A DNA stretch of 55,357 nt, counting the filler, from Sluysia triapertura (lineage: Eukaryota): assembly GCA_046118255.1 (NCBI GenBank). It is 4 parts of 4 records of this genome, joined end to end, with 100 filler letters (N's around TTAATTAATTAA, not from the genome) between each part and the next. Parts side by side here need not be neighbours in the genome. Positions count along the whole stretch, not along the records: positions 1 to 13,069 come from JBJNIA010062200.1; 3 more parts are not named here. One strand, written 5' to 3'. A model generated the notes under the pieces. The model worked only from the letters and a program-made list of their open reading frames with translations, searched no databases and was not told the origin of the DNA. The translations under genes were made by a program, and so were the position numbers. Position 1 is the first letter of the stretch. Every line of letters begins with the position of its first letter. This document shows positions 1 through 13,069 of this stretch, one piece after another.

Positions 1-70
<70 letters not shown>

Positions 71-74
71 TATT
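1..74. repeat. (TAT)n microsatellite
   Basis: Near-perfect TAT/ATT repeats read directly from the window start. Confidence 0.97.
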
Positions 75-409
75 GTTCAATAATTTTAATTCTATGCAAC
101 TTTTATTGTAACTGCCAGCAATTGACAGTTTTAATTTAAATAAAACAGTATCTACCCAATTTACTGTCAATTGTTGACAGTTATTCATACATTCAGTCAA
201 CATGTGAAGTTATGTGAGTGCACATACTCAAAGATTCAATTGCCTTTATTCAGTGATTGATTGGACGTCCAATCAACTCTACTTCTCTATTTTATCTCAC
301 TAGTTTGGATTGGACGTCCAATCAATATAGAATTGTCAAGCTGAATGCATACAGTTTTGTTATTGGACAGCCAGTGACAGTGTACCAGAATAGTTTCATT
401 GTTTTAAAA

Positions 410-1129
410 AGATTAATTTTTTTGCTTGAGTCACCATACAAATTGCATTAAAGAAATATTTTATTCTATGCAACATTTGCAATTGAAGAGGCAGATAAAA
501 TGATGAGTTATCAATTAGCTTAAGATATTGATAAAGTTTTAAGAATTATGCCATTAAAATTAAGTAATAAAAATAAGAAGAAAAATAGAAAGATTTTTAG
601 TCAACTACAAATGTATGTAGCAACATATTATAGTGATGTTGAAAAGAAGTACGAATCTTTGTTGCACGATCCACAATTTGTTGATGCCACATCAGAAAGT
701 AATTTTCAAACACGGTTGAAACAATGTAGTTGGGCTATGATTAATGATGTTAGAGAAAGATACTTTTAGATTAATATGTGAAACATTAATGCATTATACT
801 TATAAATCATACCTATCTAAAGTTTTAGTCTTTGTTAAAGTTTATCCTGAGCATGGTATAATGAATCCATTATAAATAAAATGAATATTAAAGACATTTT
901 GGCAGTATGCTCGAAACAAAAAGAAAACGTGAATCTTTTCAAATCAAGTAACGCATGTGATATGTTTGCTCACCCGTTTACCAGTAGAAGATAAGATTTC
1001 GAAGATATTGTTATGGTTGTCAATCTCAATGTTACAGAAAATGTTGATACTTATCGTCATAGAATTAGTCGAACTGTATGAGCTGTTAAAACAGATTATG
1101 CTACTACTTTCATATTTCCTGAAATTGAA
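410..1129 (+). pseudogene. Degraded DEAD-box RNA helicase (motifs II-VI), in frame with the downstream CCCH ORF
   Basis: Manual translation gives motif II-like FAIEEADKMM (~476-505), motif III-like QLQMYVATY, motif IV KVLVFV (~830, shifted frame), motif V-like TSRR*DFEDIVMVVN and motif VI-like YRHRISRTV*AVKTDYATTFI. There are several in-frame stops and at least two frameshifts. No Q motif or motif I was seen. Confidence 0.8.
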
Positions 1130-1702
1130 ATGCCTTTTGTTGCAATGGTAAAGAAAGTGGGACTTACTGTACAAAATATTGATTCCTTAATAATTAACAA
1201 TAATCTTCATGCTCCACGATCAAAGATTCATAATGATAATGCAAAGTATATTGATTTTAAGTCATCATCTGTGGATAACAAACTCCTACGTACAAACATT
1301 TCTAGTTCAACAAACTTCGATAAACATTACAAAAAGGCTCTATGTCCGTATATAACAGTGCAGAGTGGAAAATGCACAATATATGGGTCGAAATGTAAGT
1401 ACTTTCACTCCGGGAGCGAGCTTGAAGAGCTAAAAATTAACTCAACAGTTACCAGTATGCATCTTGACAGAATAAATGGCTTGCTGACATCTATTGATAT
1501 TTTTTCTCCATCCACAAAAGAACTCAAAGAATTCACCAACAATTTCACAGAAATACAGTTGGATGATCTTTTACCTGATGAAATTAAAGTAAATAATAAA
1601 CATAATTATAATTATGATAATTTAATTATACTTTTTTTAGTTAATGAAACTGGATCTCGAAGAACATGGTGTATTCAGAAATTAACCCTCAAACATTTTT
1701 AG
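1130..1702 (+). CDS. CCCH zinc-finger-containing region (TIS11-like lead-in), C-terminal to the helicase; probably part of the pseudogene
   Basis: YKKALCPYITVQSGKCTIYGSKCKYFHSGSEL is a C-x9-C-x6-C-x3-H finger with a YK..LC lead-in and a trailing EL. A likely intron runs GTAAAT...TTTTTTAG at about 1589-1640. Confidence 0.7.
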   Translation: MPFVAMVKKVGLTVQNIDSLIINNNLHAPRSKIHNDNAKYIDFKSSSVDNKLLRTNISSSTNFDKHYKKALCPYITVQSGKCTIYGSKCKYFHSGSELEELKINSTVTSMHLDRINGLLTSIDIFSPSTKELKEFTNNFTEIQLDDLLPDEIKVNNKHNYNYDNLIILFLVNETGSRRTWCIQKLTLKHF

Positions 1703-2150
1703 ACTAATTATTATAAATAAATTTAGGTTTTCATATATGTATTTTTTTAATTTGTTAAATTTTGGAATATTTTTTTTGAATAACGTAAGAATAAAATATA
1801 ATATTTTTCGGTGCAATAATATTTCTTAAGAAAGTAAATCTAATTTCGCTAATAAACAATCATAATTTGTTAATTTTAACCAACACAAAAATTTCATATA
1901 ATTATGTAAAATCTTGTCTAAAATTATGTCAAATTGTGTAAAATTCTGTGTGGGTTGAAAATCAAATCGTCTATTTATACTAATTTTACATATGACGAAA
2001 ATATATTAAATTCTATGTATATAAGTAATAAAAATAGTAATAATAATCTACAAAGTATTATTTAATAGTAATAATTTACGAGTAGTAACTAATAATAATA
2101 CATAGTAATTATTGTTTTTTCGTTTGAAATAATGATACTAGATAATTTAT

Positions 2151-2335
2151 AACACATAATAATAACACATAATAATTATTGTGTTATGTCTAAATTTTTT
2201 AATAATAATAATAATTAATCTATAAGTAATAACACATAATAATTATTGTCTTCTGTCTGAAATTATTTGCAATAATAAGTAATTTTAAGTAATACATAAG
2301 TGACACATACTAATCATTGTTTCTATCTAAAATTG
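2151..2335. repeat. Diverged ~70-bp tandem repeat (3 copies) with a near-palindromic core ACACATAATAATTATTGT
   Basis: Cores at about 2164, 2231 and 2302, each followed by (A/C)T(G/A)TCT(A/G)AA(A/T)TT. Confidence 0.65.
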
Positions 2336-4632
2336 TTGATAAATTTTAAGTTTATAGTATTTATATTAAATCTCACTTTAATATGGTTTTTGTCGATTAA
2401 AATCCTTTTAAATTTGATATAACATTATTCTCTCAATCTTTAATTTAAGTTAATTTTGATATAGAATACTTTTATTAATTTTTAATTGTATACTAGCTTT
2501 ACTCAATCTCAATTTAATATAATTTTAATTCTCATATTAGAATAATCTTTATGTTCTTAAAATTTATAATATATTGTCTTTATAGAATATCATTTTAAAA
2601 TGATTATTTATTTTATTTTAATCCAAAACTAATTGTTATTTGTTATTAAATTTTGAATTTATATTAACTCCATTAAATCTCATTTTAAATTTATATAAAG
2701 CATTATAATCTTAATGATAATTATTTTAATTTTACTTTTAAATAATTTTTATTTCAAATAAATTTATGTTAAATCAATTTAAATTTTAAAAAATTAATGA
2801 ATATTATGTTACAAAAATAATAATATTATTAATATAATAACATAACAATATTAATATCATTTTGATTTTATTAATCTTTCGCAGTTATAATGCATATTAT
2901 AATATTTGTGCTATTATCGACTTTATATTATTATTAATACCCATATAAAATAACTTGCAGTTTTTCTCGCTTAACTTTGAAGAAGAGCTTAAAATTTAGT
3001 TATAATTAAGTTATATTTTAAAATCAAATAAAATCTAATTACTAGTCTTCACTTCCTATTTTTCGCCCCATTTTAAAACGAAGATCAATGTAATAATAAA
3101 ATTTATTGATAAACTGAATAAAATAATCATTCATTATTCAAATTACGAATAGTATATACATAGTGAAAATAAATTACCAAAACAATAACATGCACTGTAA
3201 TTAATTAATATGTAAAGAAAATTGGCTATAAAACTTTAGTATAAGATTGTTATGTAATTGAATTAGATATAAAGTAAGATAGTAATTATGAAAAACAGAT
3301 TATAGAGAAGATCTTATATGCACAAAGAAAAGAATAAATGTAAATACTAAGGCCATACAATTGTGCAAATTTTGAAATTATAAATTAATAATTTATTTTG
3401 AAATTAATAAATAAATATTTTCGAATAATAAAAGCTGTAACACAACAGTTGCATTGGATCAATTAAAATTTGGTTTATTTTCACAAATAACAAAACTGTA
3501 ATATAACAGTTTAATATCCAATTAATAAATCATAACTTACCGAATTAATGTCTAAATTAATTAATACATATCGCTATATAAAATAAGTATAAATAAAGTC
3601 AATTGTAAGTTGTTTGGTTTTCAAAACTACAAGGAACATACTAATATTTTGTATTCTGTTCCGAAGGATTAAAAAGGAAATTTCATAAATATTCGTGGGA
3701 ATTCATCCGCTCGTGAAAAAAAATTGATCGACTCAATCGCTTTACTGTTTATCAGTTTTAAATTTAAGCCTCCTTGAGGAATTAATAAAATAATACTTAA
3801 AATCTGTAATTATTTCATGTTACCTTCAGCTAGTAACAAAATCTAGTTAAAAATAACATAAAAACAGCAGGAGTTTAATACCCTATTGTGATAAATTAAT
3901 TCATTGCTATTATTATATTTTAAAAATTATGGTTTATTAGTTTTGTAAGAATTATGTTTATCGGATTATTCTACAATGAGTTATTTTAGTTGTATGTACA
4001 CTAATTCGAAGTTTTACTCAATTTAGAATGCGATTTTAGTTAGTCGCGATTTTTATACTTCTCAGTTGTCCGAGATGGAAGTGCTTAATCAACAGTCTAT
4101 TCTATTAAAACTTTATTAAACGTTTGTCTTTGTTAGGTAACGTGCTGTTTACTTTTATTTGATTACGAATTTATTTTAATATTTGCTTCGCTGTATAGTA
4201 TGTTAAACTTTAATTACTTTCTTATGACGATTTGATTTTCTCGTACAGACTTTATTTTATCTGTTGAGTTTACGTTTAAATAGTTCTTAAAAGGTTCATT
4301 AATTATTTTATAAACTCGGTTTTACAATCCCTTCTAATTTATTAGGAAGTAAGTCAAATCAAATCAGTAGTAAATTTATTTAGTTATAAAATGAAACAAT
4401 AATAAAATTTAATAATATAGTTAAAATTTTATTTAACAGTTTTATAACTCAAGCTACGAATTATCTTACCAGATAGAACAGTTACTTCTTCTAGTATCAA
4501 TTTACTCGATAACAATAAGTGTTTCCTTGTTTCCTTTAGTAGTAATAGTTTCGTTCAATGATCTACTTCTAGTAATAACCACGTATGGCGATAACGACTT
4601 CTTTTAACAATAACTTGACAACTAGTCCTTTC

Positions 4633-4685
<53 letters not shown>

Positions 4686-4960
4686 TAATAATAATAATAT
4701 ATTAATTTATATTGCACTCATATCTACTGCATAAGTACTCAAAAGCGCTTATGGTTAATCATTCACAATAATATTTTTGAATCAGAAAGAACTTTCTTAA
4801 ATATTTCATAATCTTCGAATAATTTGGCATTTTCTGGTAACTGGTTGTATATTTTGAGACATAAACGGTATACAACCGATCACCTAGCTTGTTATCACTG
4901 TGGATTCTGTGCTTTCCAAGTTTCGTATTATTTCTAAAAGATATCCGGGACTTCCGTTAC
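4633..4960 (-). mobile_element. 3' end of a CR1/L2-clade LINE with a (TAT)n tail
   Basis: The minus strand encodes ...KLGDR...KIYNQLPENAKLFEDYEIFKKVL, followed by the 3'UTR TAAGCGCTTTTGAG...GATATGAGTGCAATATAAATTAATA and a (TAT)n tail (4633-4698). A homologous end lies at 51650-51910. Confidence 0.7.
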
Positions 4961-5554
4961 ATTTATATTTTATTTTATCTCCTATTTTTATTGAAACCCT
5001 GCCTTTTCAAATTTTCCAAAAAGATTTCAATGTAAAAAATTAATTTGCATGAATATGAAACAATTAGCATCGCCAAGACACTTTCAGAAGGAGTTTAAGA
5101 AGAAAATAAGTTAAGCAATTATAATTAGAAAATTATGTAAATGTAATTTAAGCAAATTTAAGACGCACAATAATTCTCCGCAAAAGAATGGTGTACAGAA
5201 AATTATAAAAATGTATAATTTTTAAAGAAATTTTATGTGATTTATGTAATTTAATATTTTGTTTTTTTTAGTAATTTTATAATATTAATTTTCAAATAAT
5301 TATCTGCTAAAGAAAAACCATTTACGAATTTCCTTATATATTTTCAGTTGTAAATGAAAATATAATTTCCTATTTGTAAACGACAACTTGATTATTATAC
5401 TATACTCTATATATTTTTATTATTTACAATATATTTTATTATATACAATCCAAATTCAAATTTAAAAAAGAAAAATTTATATTTTATGCGAATTCCTTAT
5501 CAGTAGATAAAGAAAATATGTTTAAGTCGGTGAAAATCATATCAGAAAAATCTC

Positions 5555-5950
5555 CTGTGGTGGCCAACCTATTTTCTTAATAAATTTTACTAAAAATTTA
5601 TGTCACACACTTTCAAAAACTCATCAAAAACATTCTTCTTACACAAGTTTTTGCCAACATAACAATTTCTCCCAAAATCTACAACTTACATTTTCAAATC
5701 CATAACTAATACAAAAACAATTAAAATCATACTTGTTTTAACGCCACATAACAACTTTGTAAAATTCTTCACAACCATTTATATACTTTAATTCTTTTCG
5801 TATTCATCAAAATAAACTGTCAAAACATTCCAAATCTTCAACATTTTAACCAAAACCACACTTTCAAATCTTTTCAAACACTCTAAATTCACGATTTTGT
5901 ACCATTAAATCCTAATATTTAAACAACATAGAATTACAATTCTTCAAGGC
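5555..5950 (+). repeat. G-depleted LTR-like or promoter-like tract starting CTGTGGTGGCCAAC
   Basis: About 400 bp almost free of G on the + strand. The same start motif and skew occur on the - strand at 17546. Confidence 0.45.
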
Positions 5951-6429
5951 TTTTCTGTTTTAATAAGTTCAATATGTCAAGAAGATCAAGAAATTTAAAG
6001 ACAGATTATGTTATTTCAGATAGAAAGACTCTATGTGTTTAGAAATAATAATAATAACATTTTGTTATTATTATTACTATCACAATTTTTATTTTTATTC
6101 ATTTTATTTTCGTATTGTTGTATTAATAAAAAAGATTAATTTATTAACTTGGTCACTGCCATCATGTTTAATTTACATGTCTGCCTTAATGTTACTGTTG
6201 ATGATGGTTAGAGTCGTGTATGGTTATAATTTATATTAATTTATTGGCCACCCAAGCAGAATAAATCTCTACATTGCTTTTGTATGTTTCTGGTTGGATG
6301 ACCAATTAGTAGTAGTAATAGCAAAAAAATTTTTCTGTACGCTGTATTATCATTTGTTTGGCAGCAGTTTAATACCCACAATTAAAATTTTTGTACAAAT
6401 TTTTAAAAAGATTTTGCTAACTATAGTTT

Positions 6430-7100
6430 TCAATAAATCATGCTTTCTATAAAAATTGAATATTCTAAGCACAATGATCATGAAATCAACAATGATAACT
6501 GTGATCATATTTAAATTAATACTGATAACAATAAAGATGATAAAGTTCCCGTTATAATTGCTCAAGATAATCAGAATAAAGTTGATGATGTTAAATATGA
6601 CAGCTATCCAATATGTAATTGTAATATGTACAACCTGATTGATAACATTAAAGATGACAATGTTTGAGTTTTAAATGCTAAAGATGATCAAAACAAAATC
6701 AATGATGTTAAATATAACAACTATCAATTATGCTAAAGATAAATATAACCTGATTGACAACACTAAAGAAGACAATGTTCTAATTATTAATGTTAAAGAT
6801 GATCAGAAGAAAATTAATGATGATAACTTCGAAAACTTTCGAGCATATAATTTTGAAAATCAGCATAATGCGATTAGTATTAGTATCAAAATAACAATCC
6901 CGAACATGACAGTGGCGAAGTCGAATATTATGAAGCTAACAATGATAATCCTAATGATAACAAAGGTAACAGTGTTGGAGATGATGTTACACAAACTAAG
7001 AAGAAAGAAGATATCGATGATCAAGTTAGCAACAATCAAAGCATGATGATTCCTTCTACTGCTACGAAGATAACATCCATAAACTCGAATAGTACAAAGT
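6430..7100 (+). pseudogene. Asn/Asp-rich coding remnant with a 117-bp (39-aa) tandem repeat
   Basis: Repeat starts at 6524, 6641 and 6756 (spacings 117 and 115 nt): DNNKDDKVPVIIAQDNQNKVDDVKYDSYPICNCNMYNLI / DNIKDDNV*VLNAKDDQNKINDVKYNNYQLC*.. / DNTKEDNVLIINVKDDQKKINDD. Stops and a frameshift are present. Confidence 0.7.
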
Positions 7101-7164
7101 TGATTTTTTTAATTTTTATAAAAATAATACATGTCTTCATGAATTTTATGATAATAAATTAATT

Positions 7165-7620
7165 GTGTTCAATTTTCTTAATGATAATAATGATATTTAT
7201 AAAAGTAATAAAAATAAATCTAAGGCTTATGCAATTTATAACAATAGTAATTATGATTTTTCAATTAAACGTGATGACTATAGACTTAAAGATAATGAGC
7301 ATGAGTATTACATGTTCAATAAACAAAAAATTGCTCGTATAGCTGCCATGTGCCCAGCTTCTACCGACAACAAAGGTGTTTGCTTAAGATATGGAATGTT
7401 CTGTCATTACGCACATTCTGTTCACGAATTGACGATCACCAAAGAAGATGAAGCAACTTACAATAGACACTCACAAAGAATTTCAGAATTACTAAAGAGT
7501 ATTACAGTTGTCTCTACCACTTCATATCGCAGTATTTCAATAGACAATAATATCAAGGTAAATAGTTTTGACTTTGATATCTTTAGTGTTATCTATTATT
7601 TTTATTATCATTTTTTATAG
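7165..7620 (+). CDS. CCCH zinc-finger region, paralog of 1130-1702
   Basis: CPASTDNKGVCLRYGMFCHYAHSVHEL is C-x9-C-x6-C-x3-H. The downstream HSQRISELLKSI matches HLDRINGLLTSI in copy 1. A likely intron begins after IK (GTAAAT ~7558 ... TTTTTATAG 7620). Confidence 0.7.
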   Translation: MFNFLNDNNDIYKSNKNKSKAYAIYNNSNYDFSIKRDDYRLKDNEHEYYMFNKQKIARIAAMCPASTDNKGVCLRYGMFCHYAHSVHELTITKEDEATYNRHSQRISELLKSITVVSTTSYRSISIDNNIKVNSFDFDIFSVIYYFYYHFL

Positions 7621-8214
7621 TGAGTGAAACCACAAGAAAAAGATTCATACATGAGAGTGAAGTATCAAAATTAAAATTTTTCATAAATAAAGTTATATAT
7701 TGTTATTTTCAATCTTTGTCTAGAAAAAACATGACAATCAGTTTCGAATTAAGAATTTTAAATAAAATAAATTTAAAAGAAGCTAATCATATAATTTACG
7801 AAGTTAAATATCGATTAAATTTAAATTTTCAAAACGATCATAACTCAAAAATCATAATAATCTTTAACACAGAACATGTCCTAAGTTAAAACAACATGCT
7901 GAACAGGACGATGCAAAGAGCATGGATTGTCGTTTTCATAATGCTCCAATTACAAGAATCGGAGCAGAGATCTTTGAGTTTTAAAGAGAGAATAAAGTCA
8001 AATTTGTCGAGAAACAAAGGGAAGAATAATATGTGGGAGGGCTTTTTCTTTTTTATGATTAAAATTATATTGAAATCGTTAAAATTTTTAATCAATGAAG
8101 AACAATTTAAACAGGACTTTTTATCTTTTAATTTTAAGAAATTATATAAAACAATAAAACTTTCAATTAACGATAAACAATTTAAATAAATTAACAGAAT
8201 AGGCTTAAGGCCTT

Positions 8215-9690
8215 TTAAAACAATAATTTTACAAATAAATAAACAAGATTGAATTTTATATTGACAACAAAACAAGTTATAAAAATATAAATAAGTGATA
8301 AATGTAAATCTTTATCAGAATTAATAATTTCTGATTTAACAGAAACAGAGTTAGCAATTAAAGGACTGATTCTTTGCGTCATGCCATTGTCCTTTTGAAA
8401 AACGTAAAATGTGCAACATACTATTTCATCTAGATCACCAAATTCATTTCGTAAATTATCCTCATCTTCCATCAATTTAAAATTGTTACAATTAACAGTT
8501 GAATATCTATCTTTAAAATTTTGAATAAAGTCTTTATCAAACTCGAAATTGTTATCGAATGATATATGATTTTCTGATTCACTAGACTTATCACTTGAGT
8601 TAGCTTTACATCCACTAGAAGTAGAACTAATTTTTGATTTACTTTGTGAATCAGATGTTTCAGAAAATCCTGAAGATTTACATTCTAAATTTTGTATTTT
8701 AGGCTTGGATTTTTGTATTAGTATCTTGAACCAAACATGATTTAGAAGACCATTCAGTATCTGTATTAATATTATTAATATCATTGTTTGACAAAGAAAT
8801 ATCGTGAGAAATCTGTGGCACACTAACATTTGTAGTTTCTACATCTGAAGCAGCAATTTCTGTTGTTTGAACAGGAAATCAATGCAGACTATTTGACAAC
8901 TTTAAAGAATCATTTTTTAAAAAAATCAATAATATAAATTATAATTATTATGCAATAACTGTTTGTAATTTTGTATTACAATCATTTGTTTTTCAAATAC
9001 TATAAAAATCAACTCTAGCTTTATTTTCGATTTAATTATAATATTGTTTACAAATAAAGTAATCATTGTATATTATTTATTTTTACGTATTTTAAAAAAT
9101 TTAATAAATCTTGTATTAAAGACAAATTTATATTTTTGAAAATGTACTGTTTAGGGGTTGTAGATAATCGTGATTTTCAATATATTCTTGATTTAATTCC
9201 GATGGAACTTCTGGTAGTATTTCATGCTTGGAAGATTGTGATGGATTAATATTGCAATAACTTAATGATTTTGTAGGATAACAAGTTGTAAGGTTATCTT
9301 GATCAGACACAACAAAGCTTTTATTATCGAGAAAAATAATATCGAGATTGTGTATTTTTTGAAGTAACGTCAACAAAAAATACGTTGATCAGATAATAAT
9401 GAAGAAGGATTATTTTGACTATGACACGAATTAGAGTTAGGTGTGATATGCAAAAGTGGAACAATTTTCGAAGAATCTGTAGATAATTGTTGAGTTGAAC
9501 GTGAATCATGATCATGTAAGGGTTCTGATACGGAGCACTTACTGGAAGAAACAGAATGATCTGAATGAAGTGTAGCAATGTATGGGTTTACAGATAGATA
9601 ATGATTGTTCTTCAAGTTCATTTCTGGAGTTTTACTCACTTTTGTGGTAATTAAATCGGAAAATGAATCGCAGCTACTCATTTCTAGATA
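8215..9690 (-). pseudogene. Ser-rich low-complexity protein remnant (at least two exon-like blocks, frameshifted)
   Basis: Overlapping ORFs 9370-9705, 9324-9578, 9128-9376 and 8215-8829 join by frameshifts into Ser/Asn/Asp-rich sequence. An acceptor-like TATCTAG precedes AAATGAGT on the - strand. No domain was recognised. Confidence 0.45.
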
Positions 9691-12460
9691 AATAATAAAA
9701 TTCATTAAAATGATAATTTTAGTGCTAGTTTAATATTTAAGATTATTATCAATCTTCACCTTAAAATAGAAATTATTGAATCTAATTTCCTGACAAATTA
9801 TTTATTTCAACTTTTAATAAAATTTGCAGTCTTAAAAGGTATTTGTTCCTTTTACAGACTTTAAAGTACAAATTCTTAAAGGTATTAAAATACGAATTAT
9901 AAACGAAACTAGCTTTATGATAATTAATTCAGCACACAGATCATATATTTAATAAGCATCACAATAATGAGAAAATAAAAATAAATTTATCGCTAAAATT
10001 CTATTTGGAATTGATAAATATGTGATAACATTAACAACTAACGATAACAGAAATTTAAAAGTATCGATTTGTGTTTAATATATTTTATTTATTGAAAGGT
10101 TATTTTGCACACTTAATATTAAATATTAAATATATTTTTTAAATATTAAATTTATATAAAAAATAATATAATGAAAACGTATTTAAAAAATTATAATTTT
10201 ATAATTGTATTCAGAAAAAAAATATAAAAATTACAATATTCTAGCACTTTATATGAAATTTTAAATTTTGCAATTAATTTTTATACAAGCAGTTTTTAAA
10301 AAGTAACTAATATGAGGCTACTTTCTTAAGTAATATTAAACTTTTGCAATAATACTTTGTGGTTTTCTTAACACTTGAACAGCGTTCGGTTACATCTTTC
10401 AATTAACAAATATGAATATTTAATTAAATTTATTGAAGAAATGTGTGTCTTAATTAACCCATTAACACAAATAACGCAATTCAAAAATATAAAAATTAAA
10501 TATTCATACTAAACATATTAACTATTTATCTAAATATAAAAATGAATGCCCGTCGAAGTTTTCGGACACTGACGTAATGTACTATTGCATATTAAAAAAA
10601 CAAAATTAAAATTTGAAAATGTGTTCCAAAAAATGGAACATTGAGGATAATTGGATAAGGTAATTTTTTGTAATAGTTAAAATTATAATTTGAGCAAAAT
10701 TATAAAATACTGAACTTAATGAAAATGGATCGAAAAGTGCTTGGAATATTAATTAAAAATTAAAACATTTAAAGAGTTAATTCATTACATAAGGAATAAT
10801 AGATTAATTTATTTTGTGTCGATATTTATTAAAAAATAAATTCTGAAAAAAGCTGAAAATATATTTTCCTGAAATAGAAAATAACACCTTTTTGTTTCTA
10901 GTTATTTGTATATTCTTATAACCAATAATTTACCTTATTATCTTACAGACAATCAGTTTTGCTTCGAATTTTTTAAATTATTTCAGAGACATTCAAGACT
11001 TCCACAACGTAAATGTTTATAGATTACTGTTATGATTTTGAATTCTATTGCTTTTTTGGTAACCAATTAAATTCCTTATGAGATCTCCTTCTTACTTAAA
11101 TAGTAACAATTTTCGTACTTTTATACGTATGCAAGATCGGTCGGTATTTATCGATTGTGAGTTCCTTACAGTCTTAGTCTTACTCATTAAAGGTTAAGTT
11201 GTAAGTAGCAAACAAAAGAAATAGTAAATGGAGGTAAGTAATGATTTTTAAATGATTAACTATTTTTGCAATGTGAAGTCAATATTTTTCCTTGCAAATA
11301 AAAATAATTAATTAGATGAAAACTCACGTCGGAGTTTAGTATCGTATAGAAAAAACGGTGCTTTAAATCGTCTTTCTTTTAATATTTTTAGTGTATTTTA
11401 CGACCGAGTAAAAACGGCGTACCTTATATATAATTTCAAGTACAAATAGGGAAATTTATAATATAATATATTAAATACAAACAACAGATAAGAAACAAAA
11501 TTTAACAAATAATTAATGATAATAATAAATTTACCAGATTATAATATAATCAAAAATTTAGAAATTTCAGTTTAATTTTTCGTCTGCCAAATTAAAAGGG
11601 CGATTAAAAGAAAATTAGCGATTTTAAGTTTGATTTTACGCACAAAATAAGCAGACTTAGTATAAAAACTAACGAATAAATCAAATGCGCATCCGCTATA
11701 ATCGATCGAATTCCAAATAATCCAAATAAGAAATCGAAAAAAAGTTTCTCAGATTGATGTATGAGAAAAGTGTAGACTAATGAAGCTTTAAATAGATTTT
11801 TTAAACCTTGACCATGCTATTTTAAACGAAATACATTATTTTGTAAATTATTTTACATTATTTTATAAATTCAAAATATTAACATTTTATTTAAAATTTT
11901 TATATAAAACATTAAAAATTATTAGTATTAATTTTTTCTATATTAAAGTTTGCATGTATTAGAAAATTTTTAGTATTTATTGATTTTTTTAGTATTTTTA
12001 GATTAGAGAGAAACACACAATTTGATTTAATTTTTAGATATAGGATTAAAACATATACCATTTGATTTTATTTTTAGATATTTAGAATTATTGACACTTA
12101 TAAATGAGTACAATATACAACTGAATCTTAAATAAGTCAGAAAATCTTAGAAAAAGTACATCAGATAAAAGCTGAATTAACAGGTAATTAAAAAAATTAA
12201 AACCATTGAAACACATTGAAATAAAGTTTCAAATAAATACCCAAAATTCAAATTATTTTGACTAAATCATTATTAAAGTTCCGATAACAATCTATTGTAT
12301 AATAATAATAATATTGTTCTATATTGTTTAAAAAGCAATAAATTTCTGGTATTATACTATAACAAGAAGTACGTTGTTATAGTTAAGTGACTTTTAATAC
12401 AAAATTCAATAGTCTTAGTGTTTTATTTCTAAACAAGCTTCCGTTTTACAAATAGTTATG

Positions 12461-12996
12461 TTAAAATACATATAATGAATAAATAAAAGGCAAACGTTTT
12501 TTATGCGAATCACTATTTTGTGAATTATGATTATTAGTTTTAAATCTGATATCAGGAATGCTTGCTGTTTTAGCAGTTGATTTAGTGTTTCGACTAGTAA
12601 TTTTAAAAAAATAATTCTTTTTTCGTTTTTGAATTTGTTTTGTTGGCAATAACGAATCCCATTCTACTGGAACTGTTTGATTTTTGTTAGTAAAGTTTCC
12701 ATTTTCAGTAATTTTATTGTTAATTATTTCATTTTGTTCTTGTTCTTCATCATTATTTGATGATGTAGTAAATTGATTTTCATCTAAATTAAAACACAGG
12801 AATACTTTCTGTACATTCTGTACGTAAAGTAGTGTTTGGAGATTGTGGCAAATTTTCATTAGGTAAACACAGATAACGTTTTGGATTTTTCAAGTGCTTT
12901 TTGAATATATCCACATTTATTCATTCGTTGGCTCTCTAAGGGCTGTCCTCAGGCCTAGAATCTCTGCAAGTGCATCTGTTGCGGCTCTTATGAAAA

Positions 12997-13000
<4 letters not shown>
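12461..13000 (-). pseudogene. Possible SWIB/MDM2-domain gene remnant followed by a low-complexity exon
   Basis: The - strand reads ATDALAEILGLRTALREPTNE*MWIY/KKHLKNPKRYLCLPNENL, resembling the SWIB pattern LAE.LG.....R......W.YIK.H.L.DP. It has one stop and one frameshift. A candidate 22-nt intron is GTATTCCTGTGTTTTAATTTAG. Confidence 0.35.

Positions 13001-13069
<69 letters not shown>
13001..13069. repeat. (AAT)n microsatellite at a contig end
   Basis: Perfect AAT repeats running into the N gap. Confidence 0.95.

What the first reader, a model, noticed from the sequence alone, without database searches (positions are those of the whole stretch)
1..7900. Twice-repeated module: (TAT)n, double hairpin, swappable cargo, shared atypical CCCH finger
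Seen: copy 1 (1-1700) and copy 2 (~6040-7700) are colinear at both ends but unrelated in the middle. Both have a TAT tract, hairpin A, hairpin B, a TTGG(A)CAG(C)CAGT motif and TTTTAAAAAGATT (402-414; 6401-6413), where the similarity stops. Copy 1 then carries an N-terminally truncated DEAD-box helicase, and copy 2 carries 39-aa N/D repeats. Both resume with a C-x9-C-x6-C-x3-H finger, an H..RI..LL.SI helix, IK|GTAAAT and AG|T(T/G)A(A/G)TGAAAC. Inference: this is either a gene-capturing mobile or exon-shuffling cassette that fuses variable N-terminal domains onto an RNA-binding CCCH module, or a fast-evolving lineage-specific RNA-regulator family. I do not recognise this architecture.
Basis: partly seen in the sequence, partly recalled or inferred. 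Interest (0 to 1): 0.8.

Follow-up and report, generated by a model that had tools for sequence, protein, structure and literature searches.

The report
Multicopy CCCH zinc-finger gene unit, two copies
Two old, diverged copies of a lineage-specific 1.6-kb gene unit encode a short single-CCCH RNA-binding protein behind a conserved upstream inverted repeat. The unit is present dozens of times in the genome, so the loci are real and related, but nothing shows a gene-capturing transposon.

Summary
The core observation holds. Two same-strand loci (about 100-1720 and 6240-7770) share an atypical C-x9-C-x6-C-x3-H finger plus helix (38% identity over 60 aa, E 2e-10). Each is followed by a short GTAAAT...TAG intron, the string AG|T.A.TGAAAC and an AATAAA. 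Upstream, most of the claimed similarity is at chance: the TAT tract, hairpin A and the bulk alignment. One element is clearly real: TTGG-N4-CCAA occurs four times in the window against 0.07 expected, as two pairs spaced 49 and 50 bp, and each pair forms a roughly 70-nt inverted repeat.

The middles are unrelated. Copy 1 carries a dead DEAD-box fragment from motif III to VI (39 bits against at most 4.5 for 2000 shuffles, 9 in-frame stops). Copy 2 carries frame-broken 117-nt repeats. New here: contigs of the one public run holding the locus put the copy-2 unit at roughly 50-100 genome equivalents at 85% identity or more, dropping near 7770.

No inverted termini, target duplications, reverse transcriptase or transposase were found, and the protein has no full-length relative in 1.8 billion representatives. 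My best reading is an amplified, fast-decaying, lineage-specific CCCH gene family, partly pseudogenes. A mobile cassette is not excluded. Interest is moderate.

The parts
1..70 (.). (TAT)23 microsatellite at the contig edge. It is probably not part of the unit.
   Evidence: TRF. Equivalent long (AAT)n tracts lie at 4633-4699 and 12996-13069. The 4633-4699 tract abuts an ultra-abundant repeat.
89..100 (+). 12-nt direct repeat ATTCTATGCAAC. The second copy is at 463-474, so the pair brackets the upstream block of copy 1.
   Evidence: Chance expectation is about 0.1, so significance is uncertain.
110..181 (.). Hairpin A, found in copy 1 only: a 19-bp stem rich in TGACAG.
   Evidence: DNA fold z -5.2. 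The copy-2 counterpart at 6145-6225 gives z +0.24. TGACAG occurs 9 times against 2.65 expected, 4 of them here.
256..326 (.). Hairpin B of copy 1: two GATTGGACGTCCAATC palindromes (core TTGG-N4-CCAA at 261-272 and 310-321, 49 bp apart).
   Evidence: (z -8.0).
363..375 (+). TTGGACAGCCAGT motif, with a counterpart in copy 2 at 6358-6368.
   Evidence: One mismatch from TTGG-N4-CCAA.
402..414 (+). TTTTAAAAAGATT, a putative TATA-like core promoter element of copy 1.
   Evidence: Exact only at 402 and 6401. It lies 941 nt before the first Cys. The promoter role is inferred.
602..1120 (+). Dead DEAD-box helicase fragment (motif III/SAT to motif VI, RecA2 domain). It is in the same frame as the CCCH reading frame and lacks motifs Q, I, Ia, Ib and II.
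   Evidence: HMM of three E. coli DEAD-box proteins scores 39.1 bits (positions 180-349) against a maximum of 4.5 for 2000 shuffles. All 18 PDB hits to 995-1078 are DEAD-box, with DDX23/Prp28 best. Pfam Helicase_C E 0.005. In-frame stops lie at 767, 779, 803, 818, 836, 848, 992 and 1079.
1130..1588 (+). Copy 1 main coding exon from the first ATG after the helicase relic. The CCCH finger is at 1343-1408 and the conserved H..RI..LL.SI helix follows.
   Evidence: 206-codon open frame at 1082-1699; 0 of 20000 shuffles are stop-free. Pfam zf-CCCH_UNK 20.8 bits, below the cut-off. BLASTP to copy 2.
1589..1640 (+). Putative 52-nt phase-0 intron (GTAAAT...TTTTTTTAG).
   Evidence: Read from the sequence. 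Both boundaries are shared with copy 2 while the interior is not. There are no RNA data.
1641..1685 (+). Terminal mini-exon (LMKLDLEEHGVFRN, then stop). AATAAA follows at 1716.
   Evidence: Inferred.
6243..6306 (.). Hairpin B of copy 2: TTGGCCACCCAA at 6244-6255 and TTGGATGACCAA at 6294-6305, 50 bp apart.
   Evidence: z -3.1; minus-strand RNA z -3.5. All 13 core pairs are kept on the minus strand, 2 of them with both sides changed. Most family copies read C at 6256, which closes the G6256 x G6293 mismatch.
6358..6368 (+). TTGGCAGCAGT motif of copy 2.
6401..6413 (+). TTTTAAAAAGATT of copy 2, 950 nt before the first Cys.
6439..7092 (+). Broken N/D-rich former reading frame of copy 2. It includes the 117-nt tandem repeat at 6523-6826, stops TAA 6512 and TGA 6665, and frame changes near 6720 (unit 2 is 115 nt), 6880 and 7105.
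   Evidence: Variable sites by codon position are 13/16/19, so there is no coding bias.
7093..7557 (+). Copy 2 CCCH reading frame (finger 7351-7416). The first in-frame ATG is only at 7312.
   Evidence: 175-codon open frame; 0 of 20000 shuffles are stop-free. Pfam zf-CCCH_UNK 34.6 bits against a cut-off of 31.1. The TAG at 7090 that closes the frame reads C at its first base in most other copies.
7558..7620 (+). Putative 63-nt phase-0 intron of copy 2. The next codon is TGA (7621), and AATAAA lies at 7686.
   Evidence: Inferred.
6240..7770 (+). Extent of the multicopy unit around copy 2.
   Evidence: Summed contig depth is 770-1630 (5700 in one low-complexity bin) against about 16 for exact single-copy contigs. 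It falls to 172 at 7770-7939 and 248 at 6070-6239. 6803 contigs were laid, in identity classes 399/1323/3236/1845.

Best explanation
The two loci are anciently diverged members of a lineage-specific, amplified family of small gene units of about 1.5-1.7 kb. Each unit has five parts in order:
- An upstream control block. Its only robustly conserved elements are a roughly 70-nt inverted repeat built from two TTGG-N4-CCAA sites five helical turns apart, and, 92-107 nt further on, a TATA-like TTTTAAAAAGATT.
- About 940-950 nt of fast-decaying leader or former N-terminal coding sequence, unrelated between the two subfamilies. In copy 1 it is a pseudogenised DEAD-box fragment from motif III to VI. 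In copy 2 it is frame-broken 39-aa N/D repeats.
- A conserved exon for a single TTP/Unkempt-like CCCH finger with unusual C-x9-C-x6-C-x3-H spacing, followed by a helix.
- A short phase-0 intron and a mini-exon.
- A poly(A) signal.

Only the last third is kept open, at 206 and 175 codons. What selection preserved is therefore a short single-finger protein of about 80-170 aa, presumably binding single-stranded RNA. The upstream two thirds are debris of earlier fusions and repeat expansions.

The copy-2 subfamily has been amplified to roughly 50-100 copies at DNA level: the intron is retained and depth is flat over promoter, debris and exon. The window's copies are at least partly pseudogenes.

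Shown: paralogy of the finger module, the helicase relic, the paired palindromes, the multicopy state. Inferred: promoter role, introns, expression, RNA binding, mode of amplification.
For: - Finger paralogy. Pfam UNK-like CCCH.
- The nearest proteins in 1.84 billion representatives are TIS11-like multi-finger arrays that match only the finger part of the profile.
- Open C-terminal frames contrast with 9 stops in the 194 upstream codons (Fisher p 0.0013; 0 of 20000 shuffles stop-free).
- The helicase relic is colinear and in frame, scoring 39 bits against at most 4.5 for shuffles, and is absent from all frames of copy 2.
- TTGG-N4-CCAA occurs 4 times against 0.07 expected, in pairs 49 and 50 bp apart, each about 1.09 kb before the finger.
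- The stem is kept in both copies with compensatory changes, and a family-majority base restores a pair.
- Multicopy depth is flat from 6240 to 7770, with a continuum of identity classes and a variable number of 117-nt repeats among copies.
- No transposon protein domain was found in 34 other open frames of the window.
Against: - There are no RNA data. Only one DNA run holds the locus, so promoter, transcription start, introns and expression are all inferred.
- A leader of about 700 nt full of short reading frames would translate poorly.
- Copy 2 has no good ATG before 7312 and a TGA directly after the intron.
- Flat depth across coding and non-coding parts, with frame breaks apparently shared by most copies (no indel variants reported at them, which is weak evidence), looks more like neutral amplification of an already broken unit than like a selected gene family.
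- The near-equal length of the unrelated middles (941 against 950 nt) is unexplained.
- Depth comes from summed contigs of one run and is only a rough copy estimate.
Confidence: 0.55

Rival explanations
1. The unit is a non-autonomous mobile element. On this reading the conserved inverted repeat and the 3' part are the cis-acting or self-encoded parts, the middle is captured cargo such as the helicase fragment, and the unit is moved in trans by an unidentified enzyme. A variant has the CCCH protein acting like an ORF1-type RNA-binding protein of a half-LINE.
For: - About 50-100 copies at 85% identity or more, in a continuum of divergence classes, with depth dropping near 7770.
- Depth is flat over promoter, debris and exon, as expected for neutral copies of a whole unit.
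- One contig joins 5303 to 7756 with 25 other letters between them, possibly a site lacking the segment (table 5c).
- The middles are unrelated between conserved flanks.
- A structurally conserved subterminal hairpin is present.
Against: - No terminal inverted repeats or target-site duplications appear at either copy.
- There is no reverse transcriptase, transposase, Rep or integrase domain in the window.
- The 3' conserved part is conserved as protein, not as DNA termini.
- Retention of the intron argues against retroposition.
- The left boundary is obscured by a masked microsatellite, and the 5303-7756 joint lies in AT-rich sequence with unknown anchor length.
Confidence: 0.22
2. Hairpin B is a structured RNA transcribed from the minus strand, either a miRNA- or siRNA-like precursor or the 3' stem-loop of a retroelement with an (AAT)n tail. 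It would merely lie next to the CCCH gene.
For: - On the minus strand all 13 core pairs are kept in both copies, using G.U where the plus strand has C x A, and 2 pairs changed on both sides.
- The minus-strand RNA fold of copy 2 gives z -3.5, against -2.5 for the plus strand.
- There is a weak full-length Rfam match to mir-219 (24.7 bits, E 0.086).
- The hairpin has an arm of about 19 bp and a loop of about 27-31 nt.
Against: - The Rfam score is far below gathering (54.5).
- Each arm is itself palindromic in its outer TTGG/CCAA halves. An RNA stem does not need that, but a dimeric DNA-binding protein does.
- There are only two sequences, so the chance of four compatible spacer pairs is about 0.05.
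- The TAT/AAT tract is not conserved in copy 2 and is better explained as the tail of a neighbouring abundant repeat.
- There are no small-RNA data.
Confidence: 0.12
3. The two loci are independent genes that share only a common CCCH domain, and the upstream resemblances are chance in AT-rich DNA.
For: - Bulk upstream alignment is at or near chance.
- Hairpin A is not shared.
- The TAT tract is generic.
- The 13-mer with up to one mismatch is not enriched (3 matches against 1.15 expected).
Against: - TTGG-N4-CCAA occurs 4 times against 0.07 expected, with no shuffle reaching 4. The sites form pairs of equal spacing, in the same order and at the same distance from the finger.
- The intron position and flanking strings are shared.
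- The helix after the finger is also conserved, and it is not part of generic CCCH hits.
Confidence: 0.08
4. The in-frame stops are sense codons under a variant nuclear genetic code, so both loci are long intact genes: a helicase-CCCH protein and a repeat-CCCH protein.
For: - The genome is very AT-rich, at about 25% GC.
- The frame of copy 1 is continuous from 500 to 1699 apart from the stops.
Against: - All three stop codons occur in the broken part.
- They fall at helicase positions that are Leu, Arg and others, not one consistent residue.
- Standard-code open frames of 175-207 codons exist in the same window.
- Copy 2 also needs three frame changes.
- The helicase catalytic motifs are degenerate (HRISRTV for HRIGRTGR).
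Confidence: 0.03

Closest known systems
TTP/TIS11 (ZFP36) and Unkempt-type CCCH zinc fingers (Pfam PF00642, PF25427)
   Same: - The C...C...C-x3-H finger has aromatic and Gly positions and the trailing HS..EL, as in C-x-Y-A-H-G-x-x-E-L-R.
- Copy 2 passes the Pfam UNK-like cut-off.
- The best hits in the whole library are TIS11-like arrays.
   Different: - Spacing is C-x9-C-x6-C-x3-H instead of C-x8-C-x5-C-x3-H.
- There is a single finger, not a tandem pair.
- There is no (R/K)YKTEL lead-in.
- A conserved helix follows the finger, and no database hit covers it.
Nematode germline CCCH proteins (PIE-1, POS-1, MEX-5, OMA-1) as an example of fast-evolving, lineage-specific small CCCH regulators
   Same: Small proteins whose only recognisable part is the CCCH finger, with low-complexity flanks and rapid divergence. 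This comparison is from my own knowledge and was not tested.
   Different: Those proteins have two fingers, are single-copy genes and are not embedded in a multicopy unit. No homology was shown.
DEAD-box RNA helicases, nearest DDX23/PRP28
   Same: Motifs III to VI are colinear, without indels, over 173 codons. Residues 995-1078 are 15/27 identical to human DDX23.
   Different: - Motifs Q, I, Ia, Ib and II are lacking.
- There are 8 stops inside the fragment.
- The catalytic Arg and Gly of motifs V and VI are lost.
- It is a relic, not a gene.
Gene-fragment-carrying non-autonomous transposons (Pack-MULEs, Helitrons) and ORF1-only half-LINEs (HAL1)
   Same: A multicopy unit that carries a dead fragment of a host gene between more conserved flanks, with a subterminal hairpin. 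This comparison is from my own knowledge.
   Different: - No terminal inverted repeats, 5'-TC/CTRR-3' ends, target-site duplications, 5'-truncation gradient or poly(A)/microsatellite tail could be tied to the unit.
- An intron is retained.
NF-I type palindromic sites (TTGGC-N5-GCCAA) and inverted CCAAT boxes
   Same: TTGG/CCAA half-sites lie in inverted orientation, and in copy 1 they read ATTGG....CCAAT.
   Different: The spacer is 4 nt, not 5 plus the GC flanks. The two sites are also complementary to each other beyond the half-sites. No binding protein is known here.

Membership tests
TTP/TIS11 tandem CCCH zinc-finger family | C-x8-C-x5-C-x3-H spacing | tested here: not met
   Both fingers are C-x9-C-x6-C-x3-H.
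TTP/TIS11 tandem CCCH zinc-finger family | Two fingers about 18 aa apart, each with an (R/K)YKTEL lead-in | tested here: not met
   There is one finger per locus, with lead-ins KKALC and IAAMC.
UNK-like CCCH zinc finger (Pfam PF25427) | Score at or above the gathering cut-off of 31.1 bits | tested here: met
   Copy 2 scores 34.6 bits (E 1.8e-8). Copy 1 scores only 20.8 bits, below the cut-off.
DEAD-box helicase | Complete core with motifs Q, I, Ia, Ib, II (DEAD), III, IV, V and VI in an open frame | tested here: not met
   Only HMM positions 180-349 (motif III to VI) match, at window 602-1120. There are 8 stops inside the fragment, and nothing upstream of 602 matches.
Class II transposon or MITE | Terminal inverted repeats flanked by target-site duplications | tested here: not met
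   No repeat beyond AT-rich 8-9-mers lies at the unit edges. A 17-nt inverted match at 5551-5567 and 6244-6260 lies elsewhere.
Any autonomous transposon or retroelement | Transposase, reverse transcriptase, integrase or Rep domain | tested here: not met
   No Pfam hit at E 0.01 or better in 34 further open frames of 50 aa or more, nor in the unit's own frames.
Repetitive or mobile DNA in general | Many dispersed copies with common boundaries | tested here: inconclusive
   Copy number of about 50-100 and a right-hand drop near 7770 are seen.
mir-219 precursor (Rfam RF00251) | Score at or above the gathering cut-off of 54.5 bits | tested here: not met
   24.7 bits, E 0.086 at 255-327.
Spliced protein-coding gene | Transcript evidence for the start, the intron and the poly(A) site | not testable with these tools
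   No RNA run holds the locus.

The most novel reading that the evidence does not exclude
The unit is a new kind of small selfish cassette. In this reading a conserved 70-nt hairpin (paired TTGG-N4-CCAA) and a gene for a single-finger CCCH RNA-binding protein travel together. The cassette picks up and discards unrelated host fragments between them (a helicase piece, repeat arrays) while keeping the total length near 1.6 kb. It amplifies to about a hundred copies without encoding a recognisable transposase.
Probability: 0.12. Interest if true: 0.75.

Novelty: new variant of a known kind. Interest (0 to 1): 0.4.

Why it matters
If the best reading is right, this is a lineage-specific, amplified family of minimal CCCH RNA-binding proteins with an unusual finger spacing and a private cis-element. 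That is useful for annotating this genome and as a case of how gene debris, such as a helicase fragment or repeat arrays, accumulates in front of a conserved small exon. It would not change general understanding.

It would matter more if a genome-wide catalogue showed that the hairpin and the CCCH gene always travel together with changing cargo and precise ends. That would be an unclassified mobile element whose only encoded product is an RNA-binding finger.

Tried and rejected
- **Variant genetic code:** rejected. All three stop codons occur, at inconsistent helicase positions. Long standard-code frames exist nearby, and copy 2 also needs frame changes.
- **Small introns removing the stops in copy 1:** the only in-frame GT..AG candidate (984-1094) has weak signals and would delete the best helicase segment. 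Rejected by inspection.
- **Homology of the middles:** tblastn of the copy-1 pieces against the rest of the window found only the finger. The helicase HMM is negative on all copy-2 frames. Block alignment is at chance.
- **Relatives of the protein:** two word searches, one exhaustive profile search, one metagenome scan and one viral scan found no family member. No hit carries a helicase domain.
- **Exact-protein look-ups** found nothing.
- **Metagenome scan for the 16-nt palindrome:** it gave 99 single-site chance hits. None has a second site nearby, and the two AT-rich loci tested by BLASTN show no similarity to the window.
- **Structure prediction of the finger plus helix:** mean pLDDT was 49, so no fold search was made.
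- **Rfam, tRNA scan and Pfam on the other frames:** they gave nothing that identifies the organism or a transposon.
- **Literature search:** it gave nothing relevant.
- **Joined two-exon product:** it was only translated inside a script and was not used in any search.

Full report
**Setting.** The piece is 13,069 nt at about 25% GC. Gene-like stretches reach 26-33% GC and spacers fall to 14-20%. Long (TAT)n or (AAT)n microsatellites lie at both ends and at 4633-4699. Standard-code open frames of 175-207 codons exist, so the standard code applies. No tRNA, no Rfam family above threshold and no Pfam domain other than those discussed below was found. I could not name the organism. The single public run that holds the locus is coded and is DNA, kept as contigs.

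**What is shared.** A six-frame search finds exactly two C-x9-C-x6-C-x3-H fingers, at 1343-1408 and 7351-7416, both on the plus strand.
- The surrounding 60-67 residues, finger plus a following helix (H..RI..LL.SI), are 38% identical (BLASTP E 2e-10; tblastn E 2.3e-9). This is the only significant similarity between the two loci at protein level.
- Copy 2 passes the Pfam cut-off for the Unkempt-like CCCH finger (34.6 bits against 31.1). Copy 1 does not (20.8 bits).
- Each frame is followed by IK|GTAAAT, a T-rich tract ending in AG, the string T.A.TGAAAC, and an AATAAA about 30-65 nt later. The interior of the putative introns (52 and 63 nt) is not conserved. That pattern fits real phase-0 introns, but it is an inference without RNA.
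- In copy 1 the spliced product would be 168 aa, starting from the first ATG after the helicase relic (script only).
- In copy 2 the codon after the intron is TGA, and the first in-frame ATG is only 13 codons before the finger.

**The upstream block.**
- A stringent local alignment finds only a 14-mer and is at chance (28 against shuffle maximum 33).
- A lenient one is marginal (36 against maxima 33 and 34).
- Block by block, only the hairpin B to TATA-like segment rises above genomic controls (8 of 298 reach it). The hairpin A block, the segment after hairpin B, the intron plus 3' end and the middle are all at chance.
- Hairpin A is a strong 19-bp stem in copy 1 (z -5.2) but does not exist in copy 2 (z +0.24).
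- The TAT tract is best explained otherwise. The (AAT)22 at 4633-4699 directly abuts a repeat with summed depth of 260,000-510,000 against about 16 for single-copy contigs. The contig ends in the same kind of tract on both sides. These tracts are probably tails of that abundant repeat and the reason the assembly broke there.

**The real upstream signal.** TTGG-N4-CCAA occurs four times in the window against 0.07 expected, and no shuffle reaches four.
- The sites lie at 261 and 310 and at 6244 and 6294. These are two pairs spaced 49 and 50 bp, each about 1.09-1.11 kb before the finger.
- In copy 1 both sites are the perfect palindrome GATTGGACGTCCAATC.
- In copy 2 the spacers differ (CCAC, ATGA), but the two sites remain complementary to each other. 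That complementarity extends six more bases beyond the core.
- On the minus strand all 13 core pairs are kept in both copies, with two pairs changed on both sides and G.U where the plus strand has C x A.
- Most other copies of the copy-2 family read C at 6256. That closes the only G x G mismatch and gives a 19-bp stem.
- The palindromic half-sites suggest a dimeric DNA-binding protein. The inter-arm complementarity suggests a hairpin or cruciform. With two sequences I cannot separate these readings.
- The exact 13-mer TTTTAAAAAGATT follows 92 and 107 nt later, and only there. I read it as a TATA-like element, by inference.

**The middles.** Copy 1 was read in the finger's frame with X at stops. 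It scores 39.1 bits against an HMM built from E. coli RhlE, DeaD and SrmB, against a maximum of 4.5 for 2000 shuffles.
- The match covers HMM positions 180-349, from motif III (SAT, here VAT) to motif VI (HRIGRTGR, here HRISRTV-stop). This is window 602-1120, with almost no indels.
- The segment 995-1078 alone hits only DEAD-box chains in the PDB, with DDX23/Prp28 best.
- Motifs Q, I, Ia, Ib and II are absent. Nine in-frame stops lie between the ATG at 500 and 1081, and none lies in the following 206 codons (Fisher p 0.0013). The fragment is therefore dead and now serves at most as leader.
- Copy 2 has no helicase signal in any frame. Instead it has an ATG at 6439 followed by N/D-rich sequence with a 117-nt tandem repeat (2.6 units).
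- That sequence is broken by TAA 6512, TGA 6665, a 2-nt deletion in unit 2, and further frame changes near 6880 and at the T7 run at 7104-7110. Variable sites among the units show no third-position excess (13/16/19).
- The distance from the 13-mer to the first Cys is 941 nt in copy 1 and 950 nt in copy 2, although the content is unrelated. I have no explanation for this.

**Copy number, new in this stage.** I laid the contigs of the only holding run on 4710-9800.
- The exact locus is present at depth about 14-22. In total 6803 contigs were laid, in identity classes 399/1323/3236/1845 (99% or more, 95-99%, 90-95%, under 90%).
- Summed depth is about 35 at 5050-5219. It is 770-1630 from 6240 to 7769, with 5700 in one low-complexity bin. 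It falls to 172 at 7770-7939 and to 65-90 beyond 8960.
- The copy-2 unit thus has roughly 50-100 genome equivalents at 85% identity or more. Depth is flat over promoter block, broken repeats, finger exon and 3' end, and the right edge lies near the poly(A) signal.
- Joints show copies with one more or one fewer 117-nt unit.
- At least 15 distinct contigs cover the finger.
- The TAG that closes the frame at 7090 reads C at its first base in most copies.
- No indel variants are reported at the frame breaks. This hints, weakly, that most copies share them.
- The left edge is blurred by a masked microsatellite (6044-6111) and by a different, more abundant G-poor repeat at 5551-6040.

**Relatives.**
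- Word searches with two versions of copy 2 found nothing.
- A profile of both copies against 1.84 billion representatives found 56 proteins at E 1e-3 or better. All are multi-finger CCCH proteins that match only the finger part of the profile. Sampled members are TIS11-like arrays of C-x8-C-x5-C-x3-H, and none of ten sampled has a helicase domain.
- Metagenome and viral scans were empty.
- The finger-plus-helix module is therefore lineage-specific, and a helicase-CCCH parent protein is not in evidence.

**Interpretation.** The conserved 3' third is conserved as protein and kept open, while the rest has decayed. The conserved 5' element is a specific cis-structure. The two loci are far too diverged to be recent duplicates of each other, but each belongs to a family, shown for copy 2.

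I therefore read them as members of an amplified, lineage-specific family of small CCCH genes, partly pseudogenes. Their variable leaders record old fusion (the helicase fragment) and repeat expansion.

Amplification was at DNA level, because the intron is retained. I cannot tell whether it was by transposition or by segmental or tandem duplication. No inverted termini, target duplications or enzyme genes were seen. However, the flat depth and sharp right edge keep a mobile cassette alive as a rival, at about 0.2. A minus-strand structured RNA for hairpin B is a further possibility, at about 0.1.

**Limits.**
- There is one DNA run, contigs only, and no RNA.
- The organism is unknown.
- Only two sequences were available for all comparative statements.
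- Several motif tests used patterns chosen after seeing the data.

Noticed in passing
window 4700-5049 (with (AAT)22 at 4633-4699): Ultra-abundant repeat. Summed contig depth is 260,000-510,000 against about 16 for single-copy sequence, with about 100 variant contigs, and it directly abuts a long (AAT)n tract. The contig's own ends (1-70, 12996-13069) are the same kind of tract, so these may be tails of a SINE- or MITE-like family that breaks the assembly.
   Followed up: partly
window 5551-6040: G-poor stretch (GC skew -0.49) with depth 800-6200, so it is a separate and more abundant repeat just left of copy 2. A 17-nt GC-rich inverted match (core TTGGCCACC) links 5551-5567 with the first hairpin-B site at 6244-6260.
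   Followed up: partly
window 7105-7111: T TTT TTA, the classic -1 slippery heptamer. It lies in the frame that carries ATG ATG (7044), exactly where that frame hands over to the CCCH frame. Most likely it is just a homopolymer frameshift, and no downstream structure was tested.
   Followed up: no
window 255-327 (+): Weak full-length Rfam match of hairpin B to the mir-219 precursor (24.7 bits, gathering 54.5, E 0.086).
   Followed up: partly
window 123-380: TGACAG occurs 9 times in the window against 2.65 expected. Four of these lie in the copy-1 upstream block, mostly in the arms of hairpin A, and there are none in the copy-2 upstream block.
   Followed up: no
window 8110-8960 (-) and 9131-9729 (-), 12464-12889 (-): Long minus-strand open frames (207, 119+86 and 142 codons) without any Pfam hit or paralogue in the window. 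The 8110-8960 stretch is also multicopy (depth 365-1175).
   Followed up: partly
window 12920-12990: A GC-rich island of about 70 nt (about 50% GC) in otherwise 20-25% GC sequence, directly left of the terminal (AAT)n. There is no Rfam match.
   Followed up: no
window 5303 / 7756: One contig of the run joins 5303 to 7756 with 25 other letters between them. It may be a paralogous site lacking the 2.45-kb segment that holds the G-poor repeat and copy 2. The anchors are AT-rich and their length is not given.
   Followed up: no
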